Source: Trichoplax adhaerens (Eukaryota; Animalia; Placozoa). Taken from it: a stretch of DNA of 64,000 bases. Under the pieces are notes generated by a model. The model saw nothing but the letters and a program-made list of their open reading frames with translations. It did not search any database and was not told where the DNA came from. A program made the position numbers and the translations under genes. The DNA lies in the NCBI RefSeq assembly GCF_000150275.1, contig NW_002060943.1, positions 12,533,694 through 12,597,693 of the forward strand, given 5' to 3'. Shown one piece after another: positions 10,869-49,400 of the stretch (position 1 is the stretch's first letter; the number at the start of each line of letters is the position of its first letter).

Positions 10869-11153
10869 CTACAATAATTTTATTTTATTTGCAAAAATAG
10901 GATCAGCGGCTACTTACGGTACATCATATTAAACAGTATAATAGAAAATCGAATGTAGCAAGAATGAACGATTCTCTCTATACTAAATATATTCCTCTTT
11001 CTAAGTTGAAATTGTTGAAAGCGCTTGCTATACAAACCAATTAAATGACTCTATCTTACAAATCAGGTAAGTCGCTACTATTACAGTATGCGATAGATTT
11101 TACTGTATTATCACTTAAAATAGTAAAAGAATGTTAGCCACAGTACAACTTAC

Positions 11154-15605: not shown

Positions 15606-15921
15606 TTTTCATCTTTCACAGTAGTATACCCTATTAGTATCTTTGCGGAGATATAGATGCTGATAATCGTCGCTAAAAAACTGATTTGGGTTATAACGCA
15701 AAGTTTAATATAAAATCAGAGTCTTGTCGTGTTACGCTTGAGATACGCTATCGTATCTACAGTAAATTAAAAATAGTCCATGAAAATTCATTTATCACAA
15801 ATTGTGTAAATAATGAGAAGAAAATCTTGATAAACACTTTCTGTTTATAGCATAAAAGCTTACCATCTTCTTTTACAGCATTGGCTTTCCTTTTTAAATT
15901 TTTACATGTAGAAACAACTTT
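15606..15921. repeat. Partial duplicate of 10339-10655 (intron plus 3' part of DD exon), next to an N gap
   Basis: Direct alignment by eye with only a handful of substitutions; similarity ends abruptly inside the DD exon. Confidence 0.9.
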
Positions 15922-16595
15922 ACACATATTATCTTTTTGTTATTATTTTTCGCGGGGGTCCAGGTCTTCTCTATCTGTTAAATGATCATAAAATTTTAAT
16001 TCTGAGACTACATTACAGTACTTTATCGTCATGTTATAAATCCCCTTTCTCTAAGGATAGGGTTTTGCTACTAAGTCAAATTTCTTTACAATTTGAATAG
16101 ACGATCAAATGCCCTTTCTTTAGATTAGGCATTTGCTCTATAGGGCTACTGCTATAGTAATCTATATAATACCTTGTAAAATAATGAAGAAGAAAAGATG
16201 GCGACATGATGATTTGGCAAGGTAAAACTTAAAGACACTATCACTTTCTAGGTATTTTGTATAGTAAAATAATACTAATTACATACTAAAAACTACAAAG
16301 GATTCTACTTTTAGTCCTTTTACTACATTATACTATTCTTATTGTCTTTTATTTACCATATAGTAACTAAATTATGTGCTATACAATTTGTTATAGTTTT
16401 TTTATAGTTACAACGGCTCCTACTTAAAAGTATTCGATCTCAATCACTTGACATGAATATTAAATTTATTAAATTTTGCAAACTACCTTAAATAGCCCTT
16501 TGTACCGTTATAGAATAAGAAATTATAATTCTGGTTAGAACTTAGAAGTAAAGAGAAGATATTTTCGACGTGATTATATTGATTTCATAAACTAG

Positions 16596-20180: not shown

Positions 20181-21701
20181 AGACTTTTTGGTAACAGATT
20201 ATTTAATATACAATGCCTAGTTATCTTAAAAACATGAATTTAACTTTTGAGAGTAAAGTCTGCTTTAGATTTAAATGCAATCCTTTATGTAATAAACTAC
20301 TTAATATATTCAATTCTTTAAGTTAATCAGTTGTAACTATGTATCTGGATATTAAACGCCTGGGTTAAGAAATTATAATTAATAGACACTTCTATTAAGC
20401 TATCATAAATCAACGTAATACCAAGTTGTACCTATAATTCTAAGGTTGTAACTGCAAGCTAATGTCAAAATAGTTCAGATTGTGTACACTTTGAGTGCTG
20501 CATGTTATGATATCATTCTTATACCTTCTATTTTGAATTCTTTTTATATTCATATCAAAAAATAAAATTGTTATGTTTTTGGTAATTTTATTGACTGTAT
20601 ATTGAAAGCATATTAAACCTTTAAATCGTTGCTTATGGTGATTATATTACACACGCTGCTTGCTTTAACAACTTTTCCCCCAATTTTTGTACTGCAATAA
20701 CTGAATTTTTTTCAAGTAACTGACAAAATGTAGNNNNNNNNNNNNNNNNNNNNNNNNNNNNNNNNNNNNNNNNNNNNNNNNNNNNNNNNNNNNNNNNNNN
20801 NNNNNNNNNNNNNNNNNNNNNNNNNNNNNNNNNNNNNNNNNNNNNNNNNNNNNNNNNNNNNNNNNNNNNNNNNNNNNNNNNNNNNNNNNNNNNNNNNNNN
20901 NNNNNNNNNNNNNNNNNNNNNNNNNNNNNNNNNNNNNNNNNNNNNNNNNNNNNNNNNNNNNNNNNNNNNNNNNNNNNNNNNNNNNNNNNNNNNNNNNNNN
21001 NNNNNNNNNNNNNNNNNNNNNNNNNNNNNNNNNNNNNNNNNNNNNNNNNNNNNNNNNNNNNNNNNNNNNNNNNNNNNNNNNNNNNNNNNNNNNNNNNNNN
21101 NNNNNNNNNNNNNNNNNNNNNNNNNNNNNNNNNNNNNNNNNNNNNNNNNNNNNNNNNNNNNNNNNNNNNNNNNNNNNNNNNNNNNNNNNNNNNNNNNNNN
21201 NNNNNNNNNNNNNNNNNNNNNNNNNNNNNNNNNNNNNNNNNNNNNNNNNNNNNNNNNNNNNNNNNNNNNNNNNNNNNNNNNNNNNNNNNNNNNNNNNNNN
21301 NNNNNNNNNNNNNNNNNNNNNNNNNNNNNNNNNNNNNNNNNNNNNNNNNNNNNNNNNNNNNNNNNNNNNNNNNNNNNNNNNNNNNNNNNNNNNNNNNNNN
21401 NNNNNNNNNNNNNNNNNNNNNNNNNNNNNNNNNNNNNNNNNNNNNNNNNNNNNNNNNNNNNNNNNNNNNNNNNNNNNNNNNNNNNNNNNNNNNNNNNNNN
21501 NNNNNNNNNNNNNNNNNNNNNNNNNNNNNNNNNNNNNNNNNNNNNNNNNNNNNNNNNNNNNNNNNNNNNNNNNAAAATCGTTCAGATTGATTATAATTTT
21601 AGTTTCGCAAAGTATTAAAACAGTTTCTATTTACTGTTTCATTTGTAAAAAGTTATATAGAAACATTCTGCAACGTAATTTCTTCATTGATATTAGTATA
21701 C

Positions 21702-22661
21702 CTTCATTAAGGTTAAAGATTTTAGCGTTTGATCATTTTGATTACTACGAGGCTTGATAGTAATTCTAGCTGCACTAGTTAAAGGATCGTTTGGATTTAA
21801 AACTTTACAGTCGTAATCAAGATGATAGCAGACCCTTTCATTCCAATTCACGGTAAGCGTTCGAATCATCAATTCTTTATCCTCACACAGAAGGCGCCCA
21901 TTCTTGAATTCGATTTTATAGGAGCCATTTTCTAATATAACATCTTCTAATCCACAAGGCGAAAGGGCAATTCGCCGGTAGGGCTCAGGAATATTTTGCA
22001 TTATGTTATCGTCATCTACATTTTTACTCAATATTACAATCTTCAGATGAGTGGTTTTTAAATAGGAATCAATCGGCGATAAGTAAGCCACAGCTTTGAT
22101 TTCCTGCTGATATGAGGGAAATATATGCTTGAATAAAACTGATACTGCTGATTTAATATAGATTAAATAATCCGAAAAATGTTGAATAGGGACATTAATA
22201 CAATATGTATTCTCAATTTCTTGTATAGATATGGATTGGTAATCTAATTTCTGAATGTTCCAAACTTTATCTTCTTGACTTCGATGGCCTAATTTTAAAG
22301 GTAGGTCTTTAATGTTATCCACTTTGAAATACTGACACAATTCGCTAGCGGAAGGAATTGGTAACCGTAACATTACTTCAAATGATTCTTGGTAGCCAAA
22401 ATGGTATCCATCGGGCTCTAGTCGAATAATGGGTGATAAATAAATTAGATGTTCACCATCATCGACGGGTAGGCCAAAAATGTACGGGGCATCCGTGTAG
22501 AAGGTTGTTAATGTTATGGATAAATTATCCTTTAAAGCCTTTTTAGGAACGAATAGACGTAGCTGAGGTATTTCTGGTAAGGTTATGGTATGATTATCAG
22601 ATATTGTACAAAGTTCAGTTATTTGAGGATAGCCATTTAATGCTATAAAATAGGTTGACAT
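21702..22661 (-). CDS. ZU5-UPA exon (PIDD/UNC5CL-like, HFS motif), copy A
   Basis: ZU5 motifs LRLFVPKKAL, LSPIIRLEPDGYHF, VMLRLPIP, W..., VPIQHFSDYLI, followed by a ~150-aa UPA-like region. Donor AAG|GTATAC at 21701. The true exon start is upstream of the ORF Met and uncertain; small acidic upstream exons lie at ~22864-22932, ~23487-23576 and ~23661-23705. Confidence 0.8.
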
Positions 22662-24524
22662 TGTGTTAGAGAATATGCAAGGAAAAATGCTGCAAGTATG
22701 AATACGTTTCCATCTGCAGTATTTTGCGATGATATTACCAGTAAAGATTATTCCGCTTACAATCTATCACATTATAATCTCAATAATTGTAAATCTTATA
22801 CAATATTTCTATGATATCTTGATCCTAGAATGATAATTGTCAAAGTTATACTAATGATTTTACCCGGTATAAATCCTGGAAATATATTTAAGTGACTTTC
22901 GTTCTGGTAGTCAATATCAGTTATAGCATTTTCTAGAAAAATAACAATATTTATTAATGAATTTTAAGCTAAATCGAATTTTATTTAGTATTTATTAACT
23001 CTTCAATATTCCTATCTCAACTTTACAGTATGCTACCGCTTAATATAGTAGAGTTAAATGTCAAGGATTATGTTTAGTAGATGATTATTCATCAAACGTC
23101 TTACAACTTAACTGAAGAAAACTAAAATAAGCATTTATTTCTCTAAGTAATCTAGCTATCCCGATATTATAGTCAGCTCAAATTTATGGATTTGGCTTAA
23201 AACAGACTTTGAAGTAGCTATACATGTATCTTATTGCTGTATAATAATAGTAGAATTCTAATAATTCTATTCTATGCAAATATTTGCAAGCAGACATGAT
23301 TGTCCTATGTGGAACGCAGCGGCGGTGAAATTAAAATATTTCTTGTTATACAGGAGTTCTTTTACTTTGTGTGTACATTATTGTCAAGAATAGAATCCTT
23401 ATCGTAATTTTTAATCTTTTCAGAAAGAAAAGCATGACAAAAACAATAATGTGCATTGCATTGGAAACAGTTTACTAGAAACCAACCTGGAAGTTCTTTC
23501 GCAGCTTTTTCATTTTCAGCTTCTGCCCTTACGTGGCCAGCAATAGTATTACTGCTCTGTTCGCTACGTTCTATATCTACCAATGCAAGGTTACATCAAT
23601 TCTTCAATGTGAATTTATTTCCTATTTATTACAATGCTGTTATTCTTTATTCCTTTTACCTTCAACATCGCTTTGTATCAACTGTTGCTCTTCAGATATG
23701 TTACCTAGAAATTAAGTATGTGCAAGAACATTTACCATCATATTCAAACAAAACAAAAGGAAGATCCTGCGTGTACGTAGGATTTCAATCATATCATGCT
23801 ACTTTAAAAAATTTACAGTGGCACTACATTAACGTCAGGCAGATTACATAGAAGTATTCTTTACACGCTACCCGTAACTTATGTCAATTTTGTGCAACAT
23901 TCTTAACTAAAACGAAACGTTTATTCTATTTTTGATAATTTTTGATAATTTTGATAAGGTTCAGCAGTAAATAGTTNNNNNNNNNNNNNNNNNNNNNNNN
24001 NNNNNNNNNNNNNNNNNNNNNNNNNNCGTAAACGTTAAAAGTATGTACTCTTTTGGCTTGAATGATTCTAATATAGTGCGATTTACTTAACTCAATGTTT
24101 CTGTACTAACTGCAAGCTATTCTCTTTAAAAATACAGAGTGTGAGAACTTATTGAAAAATATACTTTAATTCAAAGAAGACTGTTACAAAACACATTTTA
24201 CTGAGCAGAATTTGGCATTTTACGCTTTGGTAGTACTTGTAACGATCAAAATTCAAGTGATTGCAGAAGGTCATGTTTAAAAATAAACAAATCATTTGCA
24301 GAAAATTGTAAAATAGCGATAGCAAGATAAGACAACTGAAAACGGATGATTATAAAGGAATATTTTAGTTTAGAGAATAATCGTTATTTGTTCAAAAATG
24401 ACATAAAATGTAGCTGTGTTCTGTAAAACGAAATTAATAATCTTTTAAAATTGAAAAGATACCGGTATTTGTTTGACTAGCATCAATATTCTCAAGCGTT
24501 AATCATATATTATCCATTTCTTAC

Positions 24525-25659
24525 TTGTAAGCTTGGAATTCGTGTCCATACCATCAGCTAAAGATGGCTAGAAAATCGTTCAGATTGATTATAATTTTAG
24601 TTTCGCAAAGTATTAAAACAATTTCTATTTACTGTTTCATTTGTAAAAAGTTATATAGAAACATTCTGCAACGTAATTTCTTCATTGATATTAGTATACC
24701 TTCATTAAGGTTAAAGATTTTAGCGTTTGATCATTTTGATTACTACGAGGCTTGATAGTAATTCTAGCTGCACTAGTTAAAGGATCGTTTGGATTTAAAA
24801 CTTTACAGTCGTAATCAAGATGATAGCAGACCCTTTCATTCCAATTCACGGTAAGCGTTCGAATCATCAATTCTTTATCCTCACACAGAAGGCGCCCATT
24901 CTTGAATTCGATTTTATAGGAGCCATTTTCTAATATAACATCTTCTAATCCACAAGGCGAAAGGGCAATTCGCCGGTAGGGCTCAGGAATATTTTGCATT
25001 ATGTTATCGTCATCTACATTTTTACTCAATATTACAATCTTCAGATGAGTGGTTTTTAAATAGGAATCAATCGGCGATAAGTAAGCCACAGCTTTGATTT
25101 CCTGCTGATATGAGGGAAATATATGCTTGAATAAAACTGATACTGCTGATTTAATATAGATTAAATAATCCGAAAAATGTTGAATAGGGACATTAATACA
25201 ATATGTATTCTCAATTTCTTGTATAGATATGGATTGGTAATCTAATTTCTGAATGTTCCAAACTTTATCTTCTTGACTTCGATGGCCTAATTTTAAAGGT
25301 AGGTCTTTAATGTTATCCACTTTGAAATACTGACACAATTCGCTAGCGGAAGGAATTGGTAACCGTAACATTACTTCAAATGATTCTTGGTAGCCAAAAT
25401 GGTATCCATCGGGCTCTAGTCGAATAATGGGTGATAAATAAATTAGATGTTCACCATCATCGACGGGTAGGCCAAAAATGTACGGGGCATCCGTGTAGAA
25501 GGTTGTTAATGTTATGGATAAATTATCCTTTAAAGCCTTTTTAGGAACGAATAGACGTAGCTGAGGTATTTCTGGTAAGGTTATGGTATGATTATCAGAT
25601 ATTGTACAAAGTTCAGTTATTTGAGGATAGCCATTTAATGCTATAAAATAGGTTGACAT
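24525..25659 (-). CDS. ZU5-UPA exon copy B (24700-25659) plus next small exon (24525-24567)
   Basis: Protein identical to copy A. The 43-bp exon PSLADGMDTNSKLT (phase 0 to 1) is phase-compatible with the 11154-11270 exon. Confidence 0.8.
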
Positions 25660-26208
25660 TGTGTTAGAGAATATGCAAGGAAAAATGCTGCAAGTATGAA
25701 TACGTTTCCATCTGCAGTATTTTGCGATGATATTACCAGTAAAGATTATTCCGCTTACAATCTATCACATTATAATCTCAATAATTGTAAATCTTATACA
25801 ATATTTCTATGATATCTTGATCCTAGAATGATAATTGTCAAAGTTATACTAATGATTTTACCCGGTATAAATCCTGGAAATATATTTAAGTGACTTTCGT
25901 TCTGGTAGTCAATATCAGTTATAGCATTTTCTAGAAAAATAACAATATTTATTAATGAATTTTAAGCTAAATCGAATTTTATTTAGTATTTATTAACTCT
26001 TCAATATTCCTATCTCAACTTTACAGTATGCTACCGCTTAATATAGTAGAGTTAAATGTCAAGGATTATGTTTAGTAGATGATTATTCATCAAACGTCTT
26101 ACAACTTAACTGAAGAAAACTAAAATAAGCATTTATTTCTCTAAGTAATCTAGCTATCCCGATATTATAGTCAGCTCAAATTTATGGATTTGGCTTAAAA
26201 CAGACTTT
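24572..26208. repeat. Near-identical duplicate of 21574-23210 (offset 2998 bp)
   Basis: Only one substitution noticed over ~1.64 kb; the copies diverge sharply after AACAGACTTT. Confidence 0.95.
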
Positions 26209-27724
26209 CTAGCTCCTCTTGCTCTTCTTGCTTCTCATGCTCCTCTTGTTTCTCCTCTTGCTTTTCTTGCTTCTCTTGTTCCTCTTGTTTCTCTTTGAGT
26301 GATTTCTCATTCGTAGAAATAGCTTCTTCACGCTTACCTTCAGCTTGATAGACATTTCTTAGATTGTTATATGACTTTGCGACATCTGGATGGTTGTGAC
26401 CCAAAACTGATTCTTGAATGTTATAGGATTGCTCGTACATAGAAATAGCTTCTTTATGCTTGCCTTGATCATTATAGACATTTGCAATGTTGTTATATGT
26501 ATCAGCAGTACTTGGATGATTGTTGCCAAGTTGCGTCAGTTTAATGTTGAGTGACTTGTTATACATTGATAGAGCGTCATCATACTTGCCTTGACGATGA
26601 TAGACACTTGCAATGTTGTTATATGTTGTAGCAATACTTGGATGATTGTCGCCAAGTTGTGTCAGATTAATGTTGAGTGACTTGTTATACATTGATAGAG
26701 CGTCATCATACTTGCATTGATGACAATAGACAATTGCAATGTTGTTATATATATCAGCAATACTTGAATGATTGTCGCCAAGTTGTGTTAGATTAATCTT
26801 GAGTGACTTGTTATACATTGATAGAGCGTCATCATACTTGCCTTGATTATCATAGACAATTGCAATGTTGTTATATGTATTAGCAATACTTGGATGATTG
26901 TCGCCAAGTTGTGTCAGTTTAATCTTGAGTGACTTGTTATACATTGATAGAGCGTCATCATACTTGCCTTGATCTTTATAGACACTTGCAATGTTGTTAT
27001 ATGTTGTAGCAATACTTGGATGATTGTCGCCAAGTTGTGTCAGATTAATCTTGAGTGACTTGTTATACATTGATAGAGCGTCATCATACTTGCCTTGACG
27101 ATTATAGACATTTGCAGTGTTGTTATACGTTGTAGCAATACTTGGATGATTGTCGCCAAGTTGTGTCAGTTTAATCTTGAGTGACTTGTTATACATTGAT
27201 AGAGCGTCATCATACTTGCCTTGATCATCATAGACTTGTCCAATGCTGTCATATAATACAGCAATACTTGGATCGTTATTTTCAAGAATTTTCAGTTTAA
27301 TCCTTAATGATTTATTGTATTCCTTTAAAGCCTCGTCATGCTTGCCTTGATTCTGGTAGACCAAGCCAATGTTATGATAGGACTTACTGACATCAAGATG
27401 TTCACTCCCTAACGATTTTAATTTTATTTGAAGTGATTTGTTGTAATCACTCAAAGCACCCATAAAATCACTTTGAAGTCGTTTACAGTCGCCCTGGATA
27501 TCGAAACAAGAAGAAATCTTGACCTCTTCTAGTTTCTTAGCTAACTTTTCTGCTTTTTCACTGTATTCATTGGCTTCTATCAATTGATATTTTTGCAGGT
27601 AAGATTGAGCCATAGCGAGATAAATAGAATATTCAAGTTGACGACGACTATCACTACTCTCCGCTATCGATTTGATTTGAGTTACAGCTTTTTGAAAATA
27701 AAATAATGCAATTGCCTTCGCCAT
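26195..27724 (-). CDS. Intronless TPR protein (42-aa KLC/NPHP3-type repeats) with acidic E/Q/K tail
   Basis: About nine repeats of LGDNHPSIAxTYNNIAxVYxxQGKYDDALSMYNKSLKIxL; near-identical 126-bp DNA units. Probable original start at 27797 is out of frame. Confidence 0.9.
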   Translation of the reverse strand: MAKAIALFYFQKAVTQIKSIAESSDSRRQLEYSIYLAMAQSYLQKYQLIEANEYSEKAEKLAKKLEEVKISSCFDIQGDCKRLQSDFMGALSDYNKSLQIKLKSLGSEHLDVSKSYHNIGLVYQNQGKHDEALKEYNKSLRIKLKILENNDPSIAVLYDSIGQVYDDQGKYDDALSMYNKSLKIKLTQLGDNHPSIATTYNNTANVYNRQGKYDDALSMYNKSLKINLTQLGDNHPSIATTYNNIASVYKDQGKYDDALSMYNKSLKIKLTQLGDNHPSIANTYNNIAIVYDNQGKYDDALSMYNKSLKINLTQLGDNHSSIADIYNNIAIVYCHQCKYDDALSMYNKSLNINLTQLGDNHPSIATTYNNIASVYHRQGKYDDALSMYNKSLNIKLTQLGNNHPSTADTYNNIANVYNDQGKHKEAISMYEQSYNIQESVLGHNHPDVAKSYNNLRNVYQAEGKREEAISTNEKSLKEKQEEQEKQEKQEEKQEEHEKQEEQEELESLF

Positions 27725-29980
27725 GATATTTCACGCCCTTTTTGCGTATAGATTCAATCTCGTCAAATATCGTAGAATTGCTAGTCTGATTGGCCATATT
27801 TTACTTTTCAACAACAATCAAAATATACAATTTGAGAAAAATAGTCACAATTTGTCTACTCGATAGGGTTAACAATTTTGATCGCTGTACAAATGAGTGA
27901 TAAAATACGTAAAGAGCACACTATCATGGATGCTCGATGCTTTCAAATCAAGATCAGCATTACAAAGTCTATTTCAGTTAGGAACATGCTCTAATTAGCC
28001 AAATCGGATACGCCTTTATTTGTTCGCGGTTTTCAATCATTCATCCATTATTCTCTTACAATTCATCAGGATGATGGAGAAGAAATAAATTAAAGTGGGC
28101 AGGCATTCTTGTCGATACTTCTTTCTATCCGTTTTTCTAATATATCAATCATCCAAGTCAATCATTATTATAATAATAATTAAAAAACGCATCATTAGCA
28201 CAACACTAGCATCAAAATGAGTCAAATGTTGAGGCTACATGTAAAATAAGTTAAAGATTAGCATAAACATGAATAAAATAGGAACATGATAATAGCTTCT
28301 ACGCATACCAATAACGATTGAATTAATAAACTTGCTTAATACAATTTACTGCAGTTGTAAATTGATGTAGAGCTTTATACTCAAGTGGCGTGGATTACTT
28401 GTAGCTTTCCGCTATTTACCATTGCTGCCTTATACAGTACTAATCGAGACTATTTCATGACTTATTTTTCACGTCAGACAGTTGATTTAGTCGATTATGC
28501 TCATGCTTTGACATTTCTCAGCAGTCAATAAATGTAGTATCATAAAATAAACTGATATGATTATTTTCTACATTACTTCACGATCTAAAAATCCAATTCT
28601 ATTAAGTTCATACTCAAACTCAAGATATTAATTAATGCTAATTACTATATTCATCATAAAGCAGTATACTATAGCTACAGGTTGCACCTTTGACGATACA
28701 GTGTCCATCTTATTTGTCAATATTGTGGAGTAGTATACAATTCGCATTTACTTCGTTAACATTGATTGGATAATAATTTTGCATCATCAAATTGATTGAT
28801 TGATGAAAACAAAATCAATTGATGACTAATTAAACTAAGGCTAATGTATAAATCACCTGCATAGCGCATGACACTTATGGTACTTACACGAGGATAAACT
28901 AGCATTCTATTAAATGTATAAATTTTATGTAAGATATTAAGATAGACTATTTTATTGCAGGTTTAGTTTTAATCTCATATAATGCCATGCATATAAGAGG
29001 TGATCTGTATTATTTCAATTTACGATGTAAGTGACTCGCACTCAATTCACCATACAAAATCTAAATAGCACAAATCATACAAGTTAAAGCCGTAGTGTAG
29101 ATTCACCATTTCATTTAAAATCTGCAGACTTTCAATCCTATATTCAAATATCATAGTTATCACACTGATGTCGAAAACATCAGTAACTGAAATTAAATAT
29201 GTACAGTATAATGAACACGATGCGATTAAATGTATCATTAAACGAGTATATATTCAGTGACCGACTCGCTAGCTTGATTAATTAATAATATTCAAGTAGC
29301 ACCCAATTAAAATATCTTTTGTATGGTAATCTACTACTGTAACTGTAAGCTAAATTAATAATATTCATGACTAGAAAGTACAATTGAAATTTTGCAAATG
29401 AGAACTGCAATCGTAGATTATAGGCTATAGGAAAAGGGTAATGAAGAAATACTGCGCGTTATGTAATATTAATGGTGTGGTTTTGCAATATAATTGTTTG
29501 TATTTTAATTTGCGTATTTTCATTAAGCAATAGCAATTAGCAGTAAGCAATAAGAACATATTCATTGAAACTAATGACAAATAGCGACGAGTATTCAGTG
29601 TCGATATATTTTAACATTAATCTACTATATCGCACATTGCCTACCACCGACTTCTTTCACTATACACGCTTAAAGAAATACTCACATAAAGCTAACACCA
29701 ATTGCATAGCTACTAGTGTCTGCATATGGAAACTTATTTTCCATAATCGTATGGAAAGGGCAGAATTGAATTATCAAGATATATGCATATGCTATGCATA
29801 TATAGCATGCATATAGTATATTGCGTGAATATAGCATGAGCCCAATGACTTTACTCCGATTAGGATTTATCTTTGCTATTAACTCATAATATATACTGAG
29901 CATCGAGCGAGTATATTGTCAACATCAAACTGGAACTTAATTAGTTTAAGTAAATATTCATATATATAGTTCAAGTTTAC

Positions 29981-34980: not shown

Positions 34981-36149
34981 CAACTATTTCATATCCATCA
35001 ATGCCACTGTCAATATAAACAATTCAATATGATCCAATACAAAGAAATCCTAATTCAAAAGATCGATTAAGGCTATGGATGAAGATTCCTGGCAAAGAGT
35101 GTTGCCATTTTACCGAGATTTGGTGTAGACAAATTTTCAATTTCCGACGGTACATCTACTGGAAAATCGTTCAATTACCGATCATGAAGGATAATACCGG
35201 CAACGAATCGTCTCAATAACTTTATGTTTTGATTCATCAGCCCCTGATGACAGTTTTACTGCATCGTTTTTCAACGACTAAAATCATATCCAGTGAATAT
35301 TTCTACCCATGCATACTGTACTCTACCCTAAATAATGTTGAAGACTGTAAAGTAAACGTTAACGATATCGCTAAAGGATGGATAAAGATATCAAATGGAC
35401 GTTTAAAAGATAGCCTGAGGAAAGCTTCTTCGATCAAGAGGTTGAATGAATGACAAATGATCAATAATATATATACAACTAATAGGAAATCAATTTGTAA
35501 TCAATGTTATCGTGTAGAAGAAATGCATTCAATTCGCTAGAACAGACCGATGCACTCGCTAATGCCCTTTTCTTCCCCGATATCCGTGATGGAGACTGGT
35601 CTTTTGAAACAGAGCTACTTTATTACCTAAAGATAGAATAGAAAAACTCACGCAATGGAAATGGATTGAATGACTCAAGAGTATGGGGATTGATTTTCAA
35701 GAGTTTGTTACTCTGTAGAAAGCCTTAGCATGAGTTTATACATTTTAGAGTTCATGTTAAGCCCGAAAATGTGTCAAGTACATCATTTCAGAATGGCTAC
35801 TAATTCTCATTCATTTATTTAAATTGTCATTAGTCGATGAGCACTATTTGCTTTAATATAGTGATTGATAGCCTGGTTCCATCATGGCAGTATTACGATT
35901 AAATTTTGATGTATCTTGTCTAATATGAGATCGATGGTACTACAAGAGATCATTTTAAATTGTCTAACAGTAGTATTTTCTGCATTCCAATTGCCTATGA
36001 GTAAACTATCCATGTTGATGAAATGACTGGCCAACACCATACCGATATACAATTTCACTCCGCAATGTAAATTATCGATATTCATTTTTAAGCATTTCTT
36101 CGAACTACAGTAGAAAAGATTTAAGCCAGTCAAAGAGTAAGGTGTTCTG

Positions 36150-36880
36150 GGGAAGGGATAAATTTAGTCAAGGTGATCCTCTTGAGAAGGATGTTGAGCA
36201 ATGAATCTTTCCCAATCATTTCTAGCTAGAAAAGATGTAAGTTACTTCAACAGCAACGATTGCTAGATCAAGGAATAGATCGAATTTAGGAATTCTTTTA
36301 AGAAAGATGTCTGGCAATGAATTCTTCCCAATCCACTTTAGCTAGAGAAGAGAGCTAATTCAAAAGTAATGGTATGTCCAATCATGGAATAGATCGAGTT
36401 TAGGTAATCGTTTTGAGAAGGATGTCGAGCAATGAATTCTTCCCAATCCTGTCATACTAGAATAGACTTGAGCTTCTTCAACAGCATGGTCGTCTAATTT
36501 AGGAATAGATCTATTGAAAGCAATCAGTTTGAGAAGGATGCCGAGCAAAGAATTCTTCTAACTATTTCCTACTAGAAACGACTTGAGCCAGTTAAACAGT
36601 AAGGTATTCTCGTAAATGGATAGATGTAGTCAAAGTGATCCTCTTAAGAAGGATATCGAGCAAGGAACTCTTTCAATTATTTCTCACTAGAAAAGACTTG
36701 AGTCAGTCAAACAGGAAGATAGTCTAATCAAGGAATAGATTTACTGTAAGGAATCATGTTACGAAGGATGTAGAGTCGTGCATTCTTCCCATCGTTTATA
36801 ACACAAAAAGACTCTTGACAGCCAATTAGTAAGAGAGCCAAATCAGGAAGGGAAGGATCTACTGAAAGTCATCATTTGGA
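36150..36880. repeat. Degenerate ~116-bp tandem repeat, ~6 copies
   Basis: Anchor TTGAGAAGGATGTnGAGCAATGAATTCTTCCCAATC recurs at ~36182, 36298, 36413, 36529, 36644 and 36760. Confidence 0.8.
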
Positions 36881-37220
36881 TACGCTCATTCTTATCATTA
36901 AAATCCAAATTACGCGTAGTCCAAGTACGATATTCACAACATTTCTACAGCGTTCAATCCATGGAAATGGAGTATCTTATCAATTAATCATGTCATCTGT
37001 GTTTTAATAAGTAAGCAAGAGATCTATAGACAGAGATCGCTATAATCTCTTTCATCATGAATCATGTTGAACATCATGTTGCGGTGGTGGACTAAGGATC
37101 ATTTTAGACTTCAATCCTTCCACCGATTTCGATCGATGTCTAGACATCATTTGCGTAAACTATCAATGGAGACAATGTTAGTATAGCTATGAAGAAAGGC
37201 CTTATGACAGTGTCTAGGAA

Positions 37221-37544
37221 ATGATTTGAAGGCGTAGGATAAGATCCATTTTAGACGAAATGGTCAACATGGAGAAAATGTCGATATCAAGTCGTAAGCG
37301 TTCAGAGCGAATGGGTGATCATGGACCAATGGTACGTCGATCGCTATTTCACTTTCCGTCAAGCTAGCAATATTATGGCAGCAATGATTTGAAGGCGTAG
37401 GATAAGATCCATTTTGGACGAAATGGTCAACATGGAGAAAATGTCGATATCAAGTCGTAAGCGTTCAGAGCGAATGGGTGATCATGGACCGGCGGTACGT
37501 CGATCGCCATTTCACTTTCCGTCAAGCTAGCAATATTATGGCAG
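37221..37544. repeat. Recent 163-bp direct tandem duplication
   Basis: ATGATTTGAAGGCGTAGG...AATATTATGGCAG begins at 37221 and 37384, with few differences. Confidence 0.92.
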
Positions 37545-39069
37545 AAATGAGAACAATCTGAGCATTCGGGTTATAGCGTAACTATCTCATTCTCCTCATC
37601 GCCTCTTTGAAATGAGAAAATGAATGCCCGATTGGCAAGCCGCTGTTGCCATGATGAGTTGTTGAAGGATCGTGGGTAGACGATGGATCATCTCATGAAC
37701 ACAAATTGAAGGCCCATGGCAAATCATTTTCATTCATCTTTTACTAAGCAAACTGCGAACCATTCGCACATTCTTTGTGGAAAAGAATGTAGTAGAAAGG
37801 AGGATTATTGACTACTTGTTGTTATTAGATCAACCATGATATCGCCATCGACAAGGTTGATGGATCTTGTCGAGCAAAATGAGTCCAGGTGAACCATGAA
37901 AATAGACAGCCAAGTAAGGCCCATGTTCTACTATTAACGACAACAATTTAAACTGTAAGGATTATGATGATACAATTTTCCATCATTCTATTATCCATGA
38001 TGAGTCTCATTTAGACTGTCTTTGAACCCTCTTGGTGATCCACACACCTAAAAGAGATCGTCCATGAATCGCCATGATGTTGATCGATGATGTCCAGGGA
38101 AACTATTCAATCTGGATCATGGATAGAGACAGTCGTGATTCTCCGTGGATTATAAGAGTTTAAACGACATGGATAATCAGTGCAACACCTCTACTGTAGT
38201 CTATCATCCCTAACTAGTTCAACTGTTACTGTCTTTTAAGTCTCTTCGTCATCCACTCTTACAAGATCTTCCATCCTATCGCTATCAACAGGCCAAATAG
38301 TCAACCTGAATCTCAACATCGACAGCCATGTTTCCCCTTCCTATTCCACTCGATACCACTTACCTTGTGTAAGAAATGAGAGTAGAAAGCCAACCAACGC
38401 TACGGCTATCATGTTGAATCCCAGCAGATGTCTGGAGCTCATTTCTTTCCACTTAATTACGCTTTAACGTGCATCCAAGGTGGATTTTATTGGCACCATC
38501 TTGATCATCTACAACGCCGATCGGAATGAGCCTGGACGGGATTCTTGTCGCTAGGTGATAGCCAACCACTATGGCTATCCTATGTATCATACATCGCTCG
38601 TATCCCTGTCATTCTCCTATAGTTTTTGTCTCTCTCTTTCAATGGACAGGTGTAGAGGTCTTTAGGCCAAATCCTTCTTTCGCTGATTGGATTATACAAT
38701 GACTATGGATATTTCCCTACTGAACGGAATAGGAGAGTATGATGGTAGTCAAGGTACTGAAACAGTCCAAATCTAGTCGAGGATCACACCGAGGCAAGAC
38801 TCCATATCTACACGGACAGTATGCCCGTGCTAGGATAAATTAGCGGGTACGCTATAAATGGTCGTCAGCGCGTTCGTTGACAATATGCAATGAAAGAAAG
38901 TAGACTAGTTACTGAGCCACATCGGATCAAATAGTCCATTAAAATGACTGGCAAGAGCATTAGATCATGCCAACTACTCAAATTAAGGAGAAGATGGCTC
39001 TCTAGCAATGCGAGGATGGATCTCTATCCTTCTTCCCAATAGGAATGGTGGCAATTGCTCATTTTGAAG

Positions 39070-40835
39070 GACTCATTAAGCTGTATGCGATCATGAACAG
39101 GGCTTATTAAGCTGTATGTGCCTATGAGCCGCTCTCATTAAGCTGTATGCCACCATGAGTAAGGCTTATTAAGTTATATGCGACCATGAGCAGGGCTCAT
39201 TAAGCTGTATGCCACCATGAGCAAGGCTTATCAAGCTATATGCGACCATGAGCAGGGCTCATTAAGCTGTATGCGATCATGAACAGGGCTTATTAAGCTG
39301 TATGTGCCTATGAGCAGCTCTCATTAAGCTGTATGCCACCATGAGTAAGGCTTATTAAGTTATATGCGACCATGAGCAGGGCTCATTAAGCTGTATGCCA
39401 CCATGAGCAAGGCTTATCAAGCTATATGCGACCATGAGCAGGGCTCATTAAGCTGTATGCGACCATGAGCAAGGCTTATTAAACTATATGCGACCATGAG
39501 CAGGGCCATGAAGCTGTATGCCACCATGAGTAAGGCTTATTAAGCTATATGCGACTTTGAGCAAGGCTCATTAAGCTGAATACCACCATGAGCAAGGCTT
39601 ATTATACTATATGCGACCATGAGCAGGGCTCATCAAGCTGTATGCGACCATGAGCAAGGCTTATCAAACTATATGTGACCATGAGCAGGGCCATGAAGCT
39701 GTATGCCATCATGAGCAAGGCTTATTAAGCTATATGCGATCATGAGTAGGGCTCATTAAGCCGTATGCCACCATGAGTATGGCTTATTAAGCTATATGCG
39801 TCTATGAGCACGGCTGATTAAGCTGAATATCACCATGAGCAAGGCTTATTATACTATATGCGACCATGAGCAAGGTTTATTATACAGTACTATATGCGAC
39901 CATGAGCAAGGCTTATTAAACTATATGCGATCACGAGTAGGACTCATTAAGCTGTATACGACCATGAGCAAGGCTTTCTTAAACTATATACGAGCATAAG
40001 CAGGGCTCATTAAGCTGTATGCGACCATGAACAAGGCTTATTAAACTATATGCGACCATGAGCAAGGCTTATTAAACTATATGCGATCACGAGTAGGACT
40101 CATTAAGCTGTATACGACCATGAGCAAGGCTTTCTTAAACTATATACGAGCATGAGCAGGGCTCATTAAGCTGTATGCGACCATGAACAACGCTTATTAA
40201 ACTATATGCGACCATGAGCAGGGCCATGAAGCTGTATGCGACCATGAGCAAGGCTTATTAAACTATATGCGACCATGAGCAGGGCCATGAAGCTGTATGC
40301 CACCATGAGCAAGGCTTATTAAGCTATAAGCGATCATGAGTAGGGCTCATTAAGCCGTATACCACCATGAGTAATGCTTATCAAGCTATATGCGACTATG
40401 AGCACGGCTCATTAAGCTGCATACAACCATGAGCAAGGCTTATTATACTATATGTGACCATGAGCAGGGCTCATTAAGCTGTATGCGACCATGAGCAAGG
40501 CTTTATTAAACTATATACGAGCATGAGCAGGGCTCATTAAGCTGTATGCGACCATGAGCAAGGCTTATTAAACTATATGCGACCATGGGCAGGACTCATT
40601 AAGCTATTTGCCACCATGAGCAAGGCTTATTAAGCTATTTGCGACCATGAACAAGGCTTATTAAACTATATTGTATGCGACCATGAGCGGGACTCATTAA
40701 GCTGTATGCCACTATGAGTAACATTTACTAAACTATATGCGACCTCGAACAGGACTCATTAAGCTGTATACCATCATGAGCAGTGGCTTATTAAGCTGTC
40801 TAAGCAGAGTTGATTAAGAGCTATATGCGAGCATG
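39070..40835. repeat. Minisatellite: 31-bp monomer, 62-bp dimer, local 186-bp higher-order repeat
   Basis: Alternating GGCTCATTAAGCTGTATGCCACCATGAGCAA / GGCTTATTAAACTATATGCGACCATGAGCAG; a six-monomer block repeats at 39072 and 39258. Confidence 0.97.
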
Positions 40836-41335
40836 AGAAGAGAGCTGGTCGATCAGTCCGAGAGTCCATTGCAGCTTGCACATGCTTAAGTCCAGCTTCA
40901 ATTGATTTTACAACGTATAGCCATCAAAATGGAGTGTGCTTATGATCATAATGATGGGTGGTTTTTACACGGTAGTGCAATAAAGTGTCTACAAATTACT
41001 ACGGTTACTTTCTTCCATCATACACATGCTTAATCAAGAATGGTTAATGTTAAATCTATCTTGCAAATATGTTGTCAATCCTTACCCCTAACAGGCCTAA
41101 GAAGTTGCTTTCTCAGTACTTTACTTTGCGTGATATAGGATCAAAGACGATATCGGTTTGTTGGAGAAAGCCAAATGATAATAATTACTATATGACATTG
41201 ATGCAAAGATTTGGTGTTTTATAATATTATTTTAATCTAGACAAGATCATCATTATCACTTGCGATTACAAATGCCTCAATATCTGTATAAAGACGAATA
41301 TACTCGCACGTTATGGTACAAAATGTGAACGTTAC

Positions 41336-41839
41336 TTATTTTTCTGCCGGGCTACCTTTGAGGTCTCTTTTTGTGGAAATAAAATGACGTCCAGCTTGTG
41401 ATGGACTGTGAGCAAACATGATCACGAGTATAGCAGTACAAAAAAAAAACTGAACCAATTTTAGCCTTTGATCACTACGGCCCTCACTCAATACGATTGA
41501 CATATTGGAAAGTATACTAATCCATCGTATGATACAATGCACTAAAACATCGTGTTGATGGAATACCAAAAACCATTTCAATAATCATTTCCTGTCATTC
41601 AGCATACAAAGTACATCACTCCTGTTCAAGTATTCTATTGCCATTTCTAAACGTTTCATGGTCACATTGACCTCCTATTTATTAAGCCAAACGCGAAGGA
41701 AAATGGATGTATCAATCAAACGCTGCTCTACGTTCGCTTACAATACTCATCGTAACAATTCTAGGATCTCATTTTAATGCCAATCGAGTCCACTCAGCAC
41801 CAGTTGTAATGGCAATATCCCCAAAATAATAAGTTCCGT
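41336..41839 (-). pseudogene. Decayed death-domain (+ possible TM) terminal exon, paralogue of 7903-8261
   Basis: After the AG acceptor (41840-41841): YYFGDIAITTGAEWTRLALK*DPRIVTMSI, frameshift, FLRVWLNK*EVNVTMKRLEMAIEYLNRSDV, later hydrophobic LVQFFFCTAILVIMFA. Confidence 0.75.
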
Positions 41840-46425: not shown

Positions 46426-49400
46426 ATGGGAGCCTTCTTGGATAAGGCAAGGGTCGAAAAGACCACTAGCAGCGGCTTTGGGAATGGCTTACACTACGGA
46501 TTATCCGCCATGCAAGGCTGGAGAGTGGGTATGGAAGATGCCCATACTGCGATTGTCAGTTTACCCCAAAATCGTGAAATTTCATTTTGGGGTGTTTTCG
46601 ATGGTCATGCCGGTTCGGCAACGTCAGCCTATTGCGCTAAAAATTTACTAGACAACGTCTTGGCCAATGTTGATCATCATAGTAGTTCTACTACTGCTGA
46701 CAGTCAAGACAATGTTAGCACCACCAGCGATACTGGTAGTAGTAAGAATGGTCTTAGTGTAGAAAGTTTACAACGTGGCTTACGGACTGGTTTCTTAAAG
46801 TTAGATGAGGTACTGTATTCTTTACGGACTCTTCAAGAGCAAAATAATGCCAATTATAACGAATCGGAAAGAATTGATAAAAGTGGCACTACGGCTGTGG
46901 TCGTTGTTGTAACCCCAACGCATATCATTTTTGGCAATTGTGGCGATTCTCGTGGGATATTATGCCGTAGTAATGAAGTCAATTTCGCTACTGAAGATCA
47001 TAAACCGTTTAAACCTCGAGAGAGGCAACGTATTGAACGAGCCGGCGGCTCTGTTGTTTTACAACGTGTCAATGGTTCCTTAGCAGTATCCAGAGCTTTA
47101 GGCGATTTTGAGTACAAATGTAATAGCGAATTGTCACAACTCGATCAATTGGTATCGCCAGAGCCCGACGTGATGTCCATAGCTCGAGATCCCAAAGACG
47201 AATTTATCGTATTAGCATGTGATGGTATATGGGACGTCATGAATAATACGGATGTTGCCAATTTTGTTCGATCACGCTTGGCCATCACCAATGACTTGGA
47301 AGAAATCTGTAATGAAGTGTTGAATACGTGCTTGGCAAAGGTTTGTGCATTGCTTTTCATTCCTTGACAATTTCATTGTAGCTAAAATAGCTTGTTGTAG
47401 TTTGTACACCTATCCTTCCATTTCCATCCGCTGGCCCATCTTCAACCTTGTCTTCCTACCCTATCCAATGCACTTTCAACCCTACTTTCCCTTTCATTTG
47501 AAACTCCAACAGTCAAAATGATATCCTCATTGGAACGCGCCCATTGATCCACTGGGTGTAATGATGATCAACTCAAGGCCGTTGTCGCCATATTGGATAA
47601 CGGTGGACCATTCCACTCTTGTCAGCGGATGGATTTCTCTTCCCTGCATCATCCACTTACCCCATTGAGCAAGTTTTAGTCAATAAATCGAGTCCGGCAG
47701 CGGGCCTGTCCACTCAACAACTTACCGTCAAGCATCAAGCGCTGTAGAAACACATCTCCTACTATCGCTCGATCAGCTTCTCCCACGAGCATCCCCTTGG
47801 AGATGTTTCTCAATAGGATTACCTTATAATACAGTGATATAAACTAGCGACATGATCCTGGATGGCCAGCCGTTGGTGCAATTTTTCAACCTTTTGAAGG
47901 GGGTTTTTTTTTTCCATCCTCCAATGGGACTATAGTATGCGCGATGCAGGTTGCTTTCCCCCATACAAATGATAGTAAAGCACTATTCTGAAGGACATGA
48001 CTGCGTCAATGCGTCAGCAAATCTTCCGTACCATGGTACAGGAGACTACTGGAGTTAAGCGCTTTTGTACGCCGACGTCTGGACGCTAGTGTATAGTAGA
48101 CTAGGGCACAATGGATTCTGTTTTCTGACCACTTTAAGGTAGCAACGTTGCAAGTAGACTACTTGCAACGGCAGTTTCAGGCTGGTCGACGGTTCTGTTA
48201 GGGCGATAGTCGCTAAGAAAGCAGTAATTCAATCAATCTTTACAGCCTAAGTACTGCAGTTGACTACCACTATTTAGGGACAGTATGTTCATCAAGCTAG
48301 ACGTCCAGGCTTTCACTTGGGCCGTATAGAAACAGAGGCAATAGTGTCATGCAAGACATCATTTTGTCCACGCGTAGACAATATTAACATGGCCGTTTTC
48401 CCATTTTTTCAACCCAATTAGTCTCCATCATGGATGGATCTCGATATCACCGTCCAACAGCACTTTCAGCTTGTCTACTGTACTCTACTGATTCCGAGTG
48501 GTCCCGAAGGGATGATCAATTCAATCAATCTTTACAGCCTTACTGTAGTGCGCTACAACTATTCGACGACAATACGTTTCATCAACCGATAGTGTTAAGG
48601 CTTAACTTAGGCAGTGTAGAAATGGAGGATGCGATCGAACCTTTTCAAGGGTGTCATGGAAAAGACGATTTGGGGCACGAGTGCACATTATAAACATTAG
48701 ACATGGCCCTTTTCCATTCTTGAAAGCGAGCAAGTCTCTATCATCGAAACGATGATGGATTACATTATGAATGGATAGGGATTATTCTACGCGACTGTAA
48801 AAACTTGTCGCTGTTGACCGACGTAATAACCTTATAACAAATCAGTGAGGAGATAGGATGTAGGCTGCTCTAGGGCATCAAGTTGCCTGTGCGTAGAGGA
48901 TAAAGTAACTGCTTTGGTGGACGTAATGTGGAATCGTGGGTGTGTATCATTAAACTCAGTACCGTAACATGCCTTTATACAGTACTGTATAATGTATGCC
49001 ACACTTGAGCGTCAATAATCCTATGTAGAATAGAACGATAGGCCGCTCAGATAGGATATGGTTCATAGCGAAAATACGCTACAAGATTGGATTGAAGTTT
49101 TGCCATGAAAGCCTCGTCCATGTACACGAGGTAGCCATGGATCACCTGATTTGAATGATGGGCAAACTGGAGTTACAAAATATCAATAACTATTGTAGCA
49201 AATTCTTTTCTATGTGTACCACCGACTCATCGATCGCTTCGCCACATTGTAGGCGCCATGAATGGGTTGAATTTGATCAACTTGATCTTATTATCTTGCA
49301 ATTGAGTTTGTTTCTTATGATTCTCACTTTTGAGAAATGAAGGAATGAATGACTGCAATTGATCTTACTACGCGTATCCACGCCTACAAAAGCAGTTGCT

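What the first reader, a model, noticed from the sequence alone, without database searches (positions are those of the whole stretch)
26460..27240. Homogenised TPR repeats with a hypervariable di-residue
The 126-bp units are almost identical even at synonymous sites, yet the two codons in VY-xx-QG differ in every unit (DD, NR, KD, DN, CH, HR, ND). Two other helix-A positions also vary (T/N/D; N/S/I). Concerted evolution plus diversification at binding-groove residues is the pattern known from fungal NLR repeats and resembles TALE RVDs, suggesting a shuffled recognition code.
Basis: partly seen in the sequence, partly recalled or inferred. Interest (0 to 1): 0.8.

Follow-up and report, generated by a model that had tools for sequence, protein, structure and literature searches.

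The report
Placozoan TPR array with hypervariable groove
This is one, probably damaged, copy of a large Trichoplax gene family whose near-identical 42-residue TPR repeats differ almost only at the residues that line the ligand-binding groove. The pattern is already known from fungal immune-type receptors, and here it appears in one of the simplest animals.

Summary
ORF 26195..27724 (-) encodes a kinesin-light-chain-type TPR array. Its six core 126-bp units are 92.5% identical in DNA but only 84.6% identical in protein.

I collected 315 units from 25 arrays of the same genome. In these, six codons per unit (TPR positions 2, 5, 9, 12, 13, 31) change residue 2.2-4.2 times faster than silent sites. 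392 unit pairs share an identical 102-nt backbone yet differ at the variable codons. These six positions are the homologues of the KLC1 residues that touch cargo peptides on the concave groove.

The TALE-like one-repeat-one-letter code does not: at least six positions vary, not two. Gene-specific concerted evolution is not shown either. The units form one pool across about 12 arrays.

There is no NOD domain. A related gene model joins the same kind of array to a Death domain, and a closer paralogue has a Death exon just downstream. These loci sit among Roc-COR, CARD and Death genes.

The window copy itself looks broken. It has an 8-bp frameshift near the start, and its 3' end is replaced by a duplicated ZU5-like segment.

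First readers of this scan noted the same pattern on other DNA of this genome.

Verdict: a new member of a known kind, of moderate interest.

The parts
26195..27724 (-). 509-aa open reading frame. It comprises a remnant of the N-terminal cap, 9 full TPR units of 42 aa plus a partial unit, and a short E/K/Q-rich tail.
   Evidence: ORF list. Pfam TPR_12 at 426 bits and TPR_10 at 251 bits. Unit HMM hits. AF2 model with pLDDT above 90 over the repeats. Foldseek match to the KLC1 TPR domain with TM 0.87.
26465..27220 (-). Six homogenised core units (aa 169-420). Unit borders are 27220/27094/26968/26842/26716/26590. In each unit the variable codons are unit positions 17, 30, 37, 40 and 41; positions 18, 33 and 36 vary only across the family.
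   Evidence: Pairwise identity table. Per-codon pN and pS. Coordinates of each variable codon.
27221..27472 (-). Two divergent cap-proximal units (aa 85-168). They keep the same position in the paralogues and are 43-60% identical in protein to the core units.
26339..26464 (-). Divergent last full unit (aa 421-462). It keeps the same position in the paralogues.
27709..27710 (-). Junction of an 8-bp deletion relative to six paralogues. It shifts the frame that starts at the family's ATG.
   Evidence: MAFFT alignment of the 5' ends. Coordinates.
27654..27797 (-). Family start codon (27797-27795) and the shifted frame it now opens, which stops after 47 codons at 27654-27656. The 509-aa ORF instead starts at an ATG at 27724 that is out of frame in the paralogues.
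26195..26208 (-). The last four codons and the stop codon lie in DNA that is not part of the TPR family. Homology to the paralogues' tail ends at 26209-26220. From 26208 downward the sequence is a copy of 21574-23210.
   Evidence: Alignment of the 3' ends. Self-comparison at 99.94% over 1637 bp. Coordinates.

Best explanation
The region is the internal part of a kinesin-light-chain-type TPR array of 42-residue units. It belongs to a large, recently expanded gene family of the placozoan Trichoplax.

Shown here: the internal units are near-identical because they arose, and keep being reshuffled, by tandem duplication of units and blocks of units. The likely mechanism is unequal crossing-over, possibly with exchange between loci. 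Six codons per unit have been driven apart by diversifying selection. They are TPR positions 2, 5, 9, 12, 13 and 31, the homologues of the residues with which KLC1 grips cargo peptides on its concave groove. Positions 8 and 32 vary along with their neighbours. Almost every unit therefore presents a different groove segment (92 combinations in 100 units), and arrays of 5 to more than 20 units give a combinatorial protein- or peptide-binding surface.

Inferred: in intact relatives the array exon is spliced through a phase-1 intron to a Death-domain exon. These loci sit among Roc-COR, CARD and Death genes. The family therefore most likely supplies variable sensor domains for death-fold signalling proteins. 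That would be an NLR-like recognition repertoire without a NOD domain, serving immunity, symbiont control or allorecognition.

Shown here: the copy in this window is damaged. It has an 8-bp frameshift after codon 29 of the family frame. Its tail and Death-exon link are replaced by a duplicated ZU5-like segment. It is probably a pseudogene, or at best a truncated stand-alone TPR protein.
For: Fold and family:
- Pfam TPR_12 at 1.5e-130.
- phmmer against KLC1/KLC2 TPR domains at 4e-43, and against the Podospora 42-residue repeat protein 4Y6C/4Y6W at 1e-21 to 6e-23.
- AF2 model with pLDDT above 90 over the repeats. Foldseek match to KLC1 TPR with TM 0.87.

Family size: at least 146 matches in the genome. 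I collected 315 distinct units in 25 arrays.

Selection:
- Per-codon pN over overall pS is 2.2-4.8 at seven codons and 1.7 at codon 18, against 0.8 or less elsewhere.
- On independent unit pairs the ratio is 5.6-6.9. 45-46 of 46 pairs have pN at the variable codons above pS of the backbone.
- 392 unit pairs have an identical 102-nt backbone but differ at 1-8 variable residues.
- Parsimony counts on trees give omega 2.2-4.2 for codons 17, 30, 33, 37 and 40 in subfamilies A and B (Poisson p from 7e-3 to 7e-11). Codon 41 gives 3.25 in A and 1.87 in B (p 0.04).
- At codons 33, 37 and 41 the third base is almost invariant (pi 0.00-0.08), while the first base has pi 0.51-0.66 and the second 0.20-0.62.
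- Unit positions 30, 37 and 40 are among the eight most variable in all seven subfamilies. Position 41 is in six, and positions 17 and 33 in five each.

Groove mapping:
- The Pfam TPR_1 register puts residue 281 at TPR position 1.
- Concave positions are 2, 5, 9, 12, 13, 33, 34 (PMC1261162).
- The KLC1 contact residues are K340, N259/N301/N343, V305/L347, R266, K309/N351 and R327 (PMC6214655). Through the alignment they fall on positions 2, 5, 9, 12, 13 and 31.
- Variability in helix A sits on one helix face (moment 0.58 against 0.26 when shuffled, p 0.008).

Unit turnover:
- A 6-unit block is repeated at 100% identity on C1333.
- A 3-unit block recurs 13 units apart at 100% DNA identity on C962.
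- A 5-unit block recurs 12 units apart, identical in protein, on C1413.

Architecture:
- Trichoplax sp. H2 model RDD37135.1 carries a similarly organised N-terminal cap, then TPR units, then a Death domain.
- Its array exon is 99% identical to G000:C1396. The Death exon lies 1.3 kb downstream across a phase-1 intron.
- Downstream of a close paralogue on the same strand lie a Death exon (3.5e-9), a Roc-COR ORF and a CARD-like ORF.
- Scaffold C1333 is a compact colinear version of window 2.7-27.9 kb, in the order Roc, Death, Death, TPR, TPR.

Damage to this copy.
Against: - No ligand, expression or splicing data exist for this subfamily. The Death-exon link is inferred from a related gene model and from neighbourhood.
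- Codon counts were made by my own NG86 and parsimony scripts on short units that recombine. No recombination-aware codon model was run.
- In the two less homogeneous subfamilies, omega at the same codons is only about 0.2-1.9.
- The assembly is old and gapped. Arrays this uniform are easily misassembled. The 3' truncation lies next to N gaps and a 99.94% duplicate, so it could be an assembly artefact.
- Backbone replacements in this copy number 8 non-synonymous against 2 synonymous, compared with 86 against 86 in the other arrays. That only hints at relaxed constraint, and I did not test it formally.
- An ordinary cargo-adaptor role is not excluded.
Confidence: 0.7

Rival explanations
1. Neutral drift: the variable positions are unconstrained surface residues in units that duplicated very recently, with no positive selection.
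For: The variable positions are solvent-exposed. The whole subfamily is young: 5' flanks are 97-98% identical and backbone distance is about 3%. In the less uniform subfamilies C and D, omega at these codons is near 1.
Against: Under neutrality the variable codons should diverge no faster than silent sites. They diverge 2.2-7 times faster. At codons 33, 37 and 41 the silent third base is nearly invariant, while the first base (and at codon 37 also the second) is highly diverse. 392 pairs with identical backbones differ at up to 8 residues.
Confidence: 0.05
2. TALE-like code: each unit reads one symbol of a linear ligand such as a nucleic acid through its di-residue, so that unit order spells a target.
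For: The di-residue sits at positions 12 and 13 of a two-helix repeat, just before the inter-helix turn, as TALE RVDs do. 21 di-residue types occur in 100 units.
Against: The units are 42 aa, not 33-35. At least six positions per unit vary with similar entropy. The di-residue alphabet is dominated by D, N and H, which suits nucleic acid poorly. No TAL-effector repeat family appears among the 25 Pfam families shown. The fold and sequence match peptide-binding KLC TPR domains.
Confidence: 0.03
3. Ordinary scaffold or cargo-adaptor family: the arrays bind varied endogenous partners, as kinesin light chains do, and have no role in non-self recognition.
For: The closest solved relatives are KLC1 and KLC2. 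TPR arrays are general protein-interaction modules. No immune function has been tested in placozoans for this family.
Against: There are dozens of young paralogues with fast turnover of units and with positive selection on the groove. They are linked to Death, CARD and Roc-COR genes. A related gene model carries a Death domain. All this fits recognition receptors better than housekeeping adaptors.
Confidence: 0.15
4. Assembly artefact: the near-identical units and their mosaic differences come from collapsed or chimeric assembly of paralogous reads.
For: The assembly has 1414 scaffolds with N gaps. Many arrays sit on short scaffolds of 3-18 kb. Three N gaps lie within 12 kb of this gene.
Against: Misassembly would not place the differences at the same first and second codon bases of the same six to eight codons in 25 arrays while keeping every frame open. 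The six core units span only 756 bp.
Confidence: 0.04

Closest known systems
Highly internally conserved (HIC) TPR repeats of fungal NLRs, such as Podospora anserina NB-ARC-TPR genes and the 42-residue repeat protein 4Y6C/4Y6W (Dyrka et al. 2014, PMC4986451; Ament-Velasquez and Saupe 2026, PMC13449251)
   Same: Both have KLC-type TPR units of 42 residues and near-identical repeats. A few hypervariable positions are under positive selection on the concave side. Repeat number varies between copies, and damaged copies stay nearly intact. phmmer E is 1e-21 to 6e-23 against 4Y6C/4Y6W.
   Different: This is an animal (placozoan), not a fungus. There is no NACHT or NB-ARC domain. The likely partner is a Death domain, and the neighbours are Roc-COR genes. 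No identical unit is shared between arrays here, unlike some Podospora gene pairs. Polymorphism among individuals is untested.
Kinesin light chain TPR domains (KLC1, KLC2; PDB 3NF1, 3ZFW, 6FUZ, 7AI4)
   Same: These are the best sequence and fold matches (E 4e-43; TM 0.87). They share the 42-residue period. The variable positions here are homologous to KLC1 cargo-contact residues, including N343, which sets isoform specificity (PMC6214655).
   Different: KLCs have six conserved, non-identical repeats and one-to-one orthologues. Here the units are homogenised, their number is variable, the contact residues are diversified, and the N-terminal cap is different.
Placozoan TPR-Death and TPR-Roc-COR-death-fold proteins (Trichoplax sp. 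H2 RDD37135.1; ROCO genes of T. adhaerens, Civiero et al. 2014, PMC4104024)
   Same: The N-terminal cap before the array is organised in the same way. The genomic neighbourhood is the same (Roc-COR, Death, CARD). A phase-1 intron after the array exon is seen in the related model.
   Different: RDD37135.1 has six non-homogenised units and is only 41% identical. The window copy has lost the tail that would carry the donor site, and the nearest homologous Death exon is 15 kb away.
TALE repeats with repeat-variable di-residues
   Same: Both are tandem two-helix repeats that are nearly identical except at positions 12 and 13 near the inter-helix turn.
   Different: The period differs (42 aa against 33-35). 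Here at least six variable positions occur per unit. The fold family is peptide-binding. There is no evidence for nucleic-acid binding or for a one-to-one code.

Membership tests
KLC-type TPR (Pfam TPR_12 / TPR_10) | Score above the Pfam gathering threshold | tested here: met
   TPR_12 scores 426.1 bits against a cut-off of 30.1. TPR_10 scores 251.5 bits against 27.5.
KLC-type TPR (Pfam TPR_12 / TPR_10) | 42-residue helix-turn-helix period forming a superhelix like the KLC TPR domain | tested here: met
   TRF period of 126 bp. AF2 secondary structure alternates helices of 16 and 19 residues. Foldseek match to 7AI4 with TM 0.87 and rmsd 2.2.
HIC repeat sensor arrays (fungal NLR type) | Internal repeat identity of about 85% or more over at least 100 aa (criterion of Dyrka et al.) | tested here: inconclusive
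   Six core units over 252 aa have a mean protein identity of 84.6% (78.6-90.5) and a mean DNA identity of 92.5%. This is borderline by protein and clear by DNA.
HIC repeat sensor arrays (fungal NLR type) | A few hypervariable codons under positive selection | tested here: met
   These are my own counting methods, not HyPhy or PAML.
HIC repeat sensor arrays (fungal NLR type) | Variable sites lie on the concave binding surface | tested here: met
   The mapping uses the Pfam TPR_1 register, PMC1261162, and KLC1 contact residues from PMC6214655 carried over through the alignment. It rests on homology.
HIC repeat sensor arrays (fungal NLR type) | Repeat-number variation | tested here: met
   Paralogous arrays hold from 5 to more than 20 units, with recent block duplications. 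Variation among individuals cannot be tested with these tools.
NOD-like receptors (STAND NTPase plus repeats) | A NACHT or NB-ARC domain in the same protein | tested here: not met
   The ORF has only TPR-type Pfam hits. Intact paralogues start about 120 aa before the array with a cap that has no NTPase. The neighbours are Roc-COR, Death and CARD-like.
TALE repeats | Repeats of 33-35 aa that vary only at residues 12 and 13 | tested here: not met
   The units are 42 aa, and six to eight positions vary with similar entropy.
Placozoan TPR-Death proteins | Array exon joined to a Death-domain exon | tested here: not met
   This holds for the window copy only. Its tail homology ends at 26209 and a stop follows in foreign DNA. 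In related genes the link is supported by a gene model or by a Death exon 2.4-3 kb downstream.

The most novel reading that the evidence does not exclude
Trichoplax carries a germline repertoire of homogenised TPR sensor exons whose groove residues are diversified. Each exon has its own conserved promoter-proximal flank and a 3' donor site. The exons are arranged in tandem upstream of shared Death (or Roc-COR, or CARD) exons. Together they would form a variable-sensor and constant-effector system without a NOD domain, used for immune, symbiont or allorecognition sensing. Damaged copies such as this one would survive as reservoirs of units for exchange.
Probability: 0.2. Interest if true: 0.85.

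Novelty: new member of a known kind. Interest (0 to 1): 0.55.

Why it matters
Placozoans lack LRR-type NLRs and Toll-like receptors (Kamm et al. 2019, PMC6321704), so how they recognise microbes or non-self is an open question. A family of dozens of young TPR arrays with selection-driven diversity on the ligand groove, linked to death-fold signalling genes, is a concrete candidate for that role.

It would extend the mechanism of homogenised repeats with hypervariable contact residues from fungal NLRs to an early-branching animal and to a protein layout without a NOD domain. The family also offers a natural library of KLC-like grooves for studying how TPR specificity is encoded.

Tried and rejected
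- Big word-based protein search. It was swamped by generic TPR_12 proteins at 31-52% identity. It returned no close paralogue or orthologue, only two Trichoplax sp. H2 models at 41-44%. It says nothing about orthologous arrays in other placozoans.
- Exact look-up of four ORFs. None is in the collection, so there is no annotation or accession for this gene.
- Within-array against between-array backbone distance. There was no difference, so I dropped gene-specific concerted evolution.
- Search for identical units shared between arrays. None was found. Identical units occur only as block duplicates within arrays.
- Link between the TPR ORF and the 322-aa ORF just downstream. That ORF is absent beside the other paralogues fetched. 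It is a weak ZU5 match (E 0.045), has no PDB sequence match, and its AF2 model is unusable (pLDDT 36).
- Direct geometric mapping of the variable residues on the AF2 model. Coordinates are not exposed to scripts, so I used homology to KLC1 contacts instead.
- Marold et al. 2015 on the 42-residue repeat protein is not held in the library.
- Two of my own calls failed or were unusable: a mistaken coordinate conversion and two off-frame translations. I redid these.

Full report
**What is there**

The window is eukaryotic. It has about 31% G+C, N gaps and sparse ORFs, and it carries Roc-COR, PP2C and carboxylesterase genes. It is G000:C1414:12533694-12597693 in a 105.6-Mb assembly of 1414 scaffolds.

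A Trichoplax sp. H2 protein (RDD37135.1) is 99% identical over residues 1-405 to another scaffold of this genome. The genome is therefore Trichoplax or a very close relative. An earlier follow-up note of this scan says the same.

The finding lies in a 509-aa ORF at 26195..27724 on the minus strand. No ORF of 80 aa or more overlaps it on the plus strand. Pfam gives TPR_12 at 1.5e-130 and TPR_10 at 9.2e-77. The nearest solved relatives by sequence are the kinesin light chain TPR domains (E 4e-43). The Podospora 42-residue repeat protein 4Y6C/4Y6W scores 1e-21 to 6e-23. An AF2 model has pLDDT above 90 over the repeats and matches the KLC1 TPR domain with TM 0.87.

**Checking the observation**

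TRF finds a 126-bp period at 26459-27273 with 91% matches.

The six core units (26465-27220) are 92.5% identical in DNA but only 84.6% identical in protein. 11 of the 20 variable nucleotide columns fall in 8 codons (Fisher p 7.5e-5). The two cap-proximal units and the last unit are much more divergent, at 36-60% protein identity. They keep their positions in the paralogues. This is what unequal crossing-over inside an array would produce.

**The family**

The genome holds at least 146 matches to this protein. From 30 loci I extracted 315 distinct full units in 25 arrays. The arrays fall into seven subfamilies, each with its own unit consensus.

The window gene belongs to subfamily A, which has 12 arrays and 93-100 distinct internal units, depending on the filter. 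In this subfamily eight codons stand out: unit positions 17, 18, 30, 33, 36, 37, 40 and 41. pN over overall pS is 2.2-4.8 at seven of them and 1.7 at codon 18. It is 0.8 or less at all other codons.

- On independent nearest-neighbour pairs, chosen on one half of the backbone and measured on the other, pN at the variable codons over pS of the backbone is 5.6-6.9. It exceeds pS in 45-46 of 46 pairs.
- 392 unit pairs have a 100% identical 102-nt backbone yet differ at 1-8 variable residues.
- Parsimony counts were made on a tree built from all sites, which is conservative for the variable codons. Omega is 2.5-3.6 in subfamily A and 1.9-4.2 in subfamily B for codons 17, 30, 33, 37, 40 and 41. Poisson p runs from 0.04 to 7e-11, and codon 41 in B is the weakest. 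Codons 18 and 36 do not exceed the silent rate.
- At codons 33, 37 and 41 the third base is almost invariant (pi 0.00-0.08). The first base has pi 0.51-0.66 and the second 0.20-0.62. This is the opposite of what relaxed constraint would give.
- Unit positions 30, 37 and 40 are among the eight most variable in all seven subfamilies. Position 41 is in six, and positions 17 and 33 in five each.
- In the two less uniform subfamilies, omega at these codons is only about 0.2-1.9.

**Where the variable sites lie**

The Pfam TPR_1 match puts residue 281 at TPR position 1. Unit positions 30, 33, 36, 37, 40, 41, 17 and 18 are therefore TPR positions 2, 5, 8, 9, 12, 13, 31 and 32.

Magliery and Regan found positions 2, 5, 9, 12, 13, 33 and 34 to be the most variable across all TPRs. 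They lie on the concave face, and positions 2, 5, 6, 9, 12 and 13 contact ligand in HOP (PMC1261162).

The KLC1-JIP1 and KLC1-TorsinA structures list the contact residues K340, N259/N301/N343/N469, V305/L347, R266, K309/N351 and R327 (PMC6214655). I carried these through the 42-residue period and the residue-by-residue alignment. They fall on TPR positions 2, 5, 9, 12, 13 and 31. These are exactly the six codons with omega above 1. KLC1 N343, at position 5, is the residue that sets KLC1 against KLC2 specificity.

Variability in helix A is confined to one helix face (moment 0.58 against 0.26 when shuffled, p 0.008).

**Homogenisation**

In subfamily A, backbone distance is the same within arrays (0.034) and between arrays (0.032; permutation p 0.85). 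The 5' flanks of the paralogues are also 97-98% identical. The data therefore show one young or homogenised pool of units across about 12 arrays. They do not show gene-specific concerted evolution.

Ongoing unit turnover is visible in three places:
- a 6-unit block repeated at 100% identity on C1333;
- a 3-unit block recurring 13 units apart at 100% DNA identity on C962;
- a 5-unit block recurring 12 units apart, identical in protein, on C1413.

No identical unit is shared between arrays. 100 units carry 92 different combinations at the eight variable positions. Neighbouring positions (17-18, 36-37, 40-41) and some helix-face neighbours are associated, but most pairs are not.

**Not a TALE-like code**

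The di-residue (entropy 2.4 and 2.1 bits) is no more variable than positions 37, 17, 30 and 33 (2.4, 2.1, 2.0 and 1.8 bits). The units are 42 aa. The variable residues are mostly D, N, H, K, R, S and Y. The closest folds bind peptides.

**Architecture and state of this copy**

Six paralogues start 73 bp upstream of the window ORF's ATG, with a shared cap of about 120 aa. The window copy has an 8-bp deletion (junction 27710/27709). As a result the family ATG at 27797 now opens a frame that stops after 47 codons. The 509-aa ORF begins at an ATG (27724) that is out of frame in the paralogues.

At the 3' end the paralogues continue for about 70-90 more residues of E/K/Q-rich tail. The window's homology ends at 26209-26220. 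From 26208 downward the DNA is a 99.94% copy of 21574-23210, which carries a 322-aa ZU5-like ORF. N gaps lie nearby, so misassembly of the 3' end cannot be excluded.

Backbone replacements in this copy number 8 non-synonymous against 2 synonymous. In the other arrays the totals are 86 against 86. This hints at relaxed constraint, but I did not test it formally.

**Architecture of intact relatives**

- The Trichoplax sp. H2 model RDD37135.1 has a similarly organised cap, six TPR units and a Death domain. In this genome its array exon ends in a phase-1 donor, and the Death exon follows after 1.3 kb.
- Downstream of a close paralogue (C1414:12.75 Mb), on the same strand, lie a Death exon (Pfam 3.5e-9), a 762-aa Roc-COR ORF and a CARD-like ORF. 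A phase-1 donor in that paralogue's tail and a phase-1 acceptor before the Death exon would join in frame. This is my reading and is an inference.
- Scaffold C1333 is a compact, colinear version of window 2.7-27.9 kb, in the order Roc, Death, Death, TPR, TPR. Its Death exon lies about 2.4 kb below the array. In the window the homologous Death exon (10494-10884) is 15 kb away.
- ROCO genes with TPR, CARD and death domains in T. adhaerens are published (PMC4104024). Placozoan NLRs with TPR or WD40 repeats are published too (PMC6321704).

**Comparison with what is known**

Near-identical TPR, ANK and WD repeats with positively selected concave positions define the HIC repeats of fungal NLRs (PMC4986451). 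A 2026 survey reports HIC repeats in NLR-like proteins of animals, plants and bacteria as well (PMC13449251).

I found no paper describing this for placozoans or for TPR-Death proteins. This is an absence in the held library only.

The finding is a new member of a known kind. Its novelty is the host lineage and the layout without a NOD domain. First readers of this scan flagged the same pattern on other DNA of this genome.

Noticed in passing
window 21574-23210 and 24572-26208: A 1637-bp direct duplicate at 99.94% identity. Each copy carries an identical 322-aa ORF (21693..22661 and 24691..25659, minus strand). The ORF has a weak ZU5 match (E 0.045) and an HFS tripeptide. N gaps flank the copies (20734-21573 and 23977-24026), so this is either a very recent duplication or an assembly artefact.
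   Followed up: partly
window 2834-5039 (+) and 5312-5539 (+): A Roc-COR gene (Pfam Roc and COR-A) followed on the same strand by a Death-like stretch. It is 95.6% identical in DNA to part of scaffold C1333.
   Followed up: partly
window 7927-8292, 10494-10884, 15760-15939 (all minus) and 41715-41828 (minus): Death-domain exons or fragments, 92-97% identical in protein to Death exons on C1333. The stretch at 41715-41828 is a weak fossil (39% over 38 aa).
   Followed up: partly
window 20636-20728 (-): A short match (58% over 31 aa) to the CARD-like ORF that follows Roc-COR at the paralogous locus. It is cut off by the N gap at 20734.
   Followed up: no
window 62322-63875 (-): A second TPR_12 ORF (517 aa, 6e-75). 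Its units are divergent and not homogenised.
   Followed up: no
L042/L013/L003 = G000:C1333:1-17321: This 18-kb scaffold is a compact colinear version of window 2.7-27.9 kb, in the order Roc, Death, Death and two tandem TPR arrays. Its first 1.9 kb match window 36464-38091 instead. It is either a diverged haplotype or a segmental duplicate.
   Followed up: partly
G000:C1333:11809-13572; G000:C1413:903496-905637; G000:C962:3-2144: Blocks of 6, 5 and 3 units are repeated within arrays. The blocks on C1333 and C962 are 100% identical in DNA. The block on C1413 is identical in protein. They reflect recent multi-unit tandem duplication or assembly repeats.
   Followed up: partly
L003 (G000:C1333, array start): One paralogue starts M-G-N-R-T-S where the others have M-A-N-Q-T-S. 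The glycine at position 2 followed by S at position 6 could be an N-myristoylation signal.
   Followed up: no
L040/L021 (G000:C1295) and L028 (G000:C1375): In another subfamily the end of the TPR ORF overlaps, in a different frame, the start of a Roc-COR ORF (Roc 5.9e-11, COR-A 4e-11). This suggests a TPR-Roc-COR gene joined by a short intron.
   Followed up: partly
window 36000-50000: G+C rises from about 0.31 to 0.38-0.44. The region holds the PP2C ORF (46426..47367).
   Followed up: no
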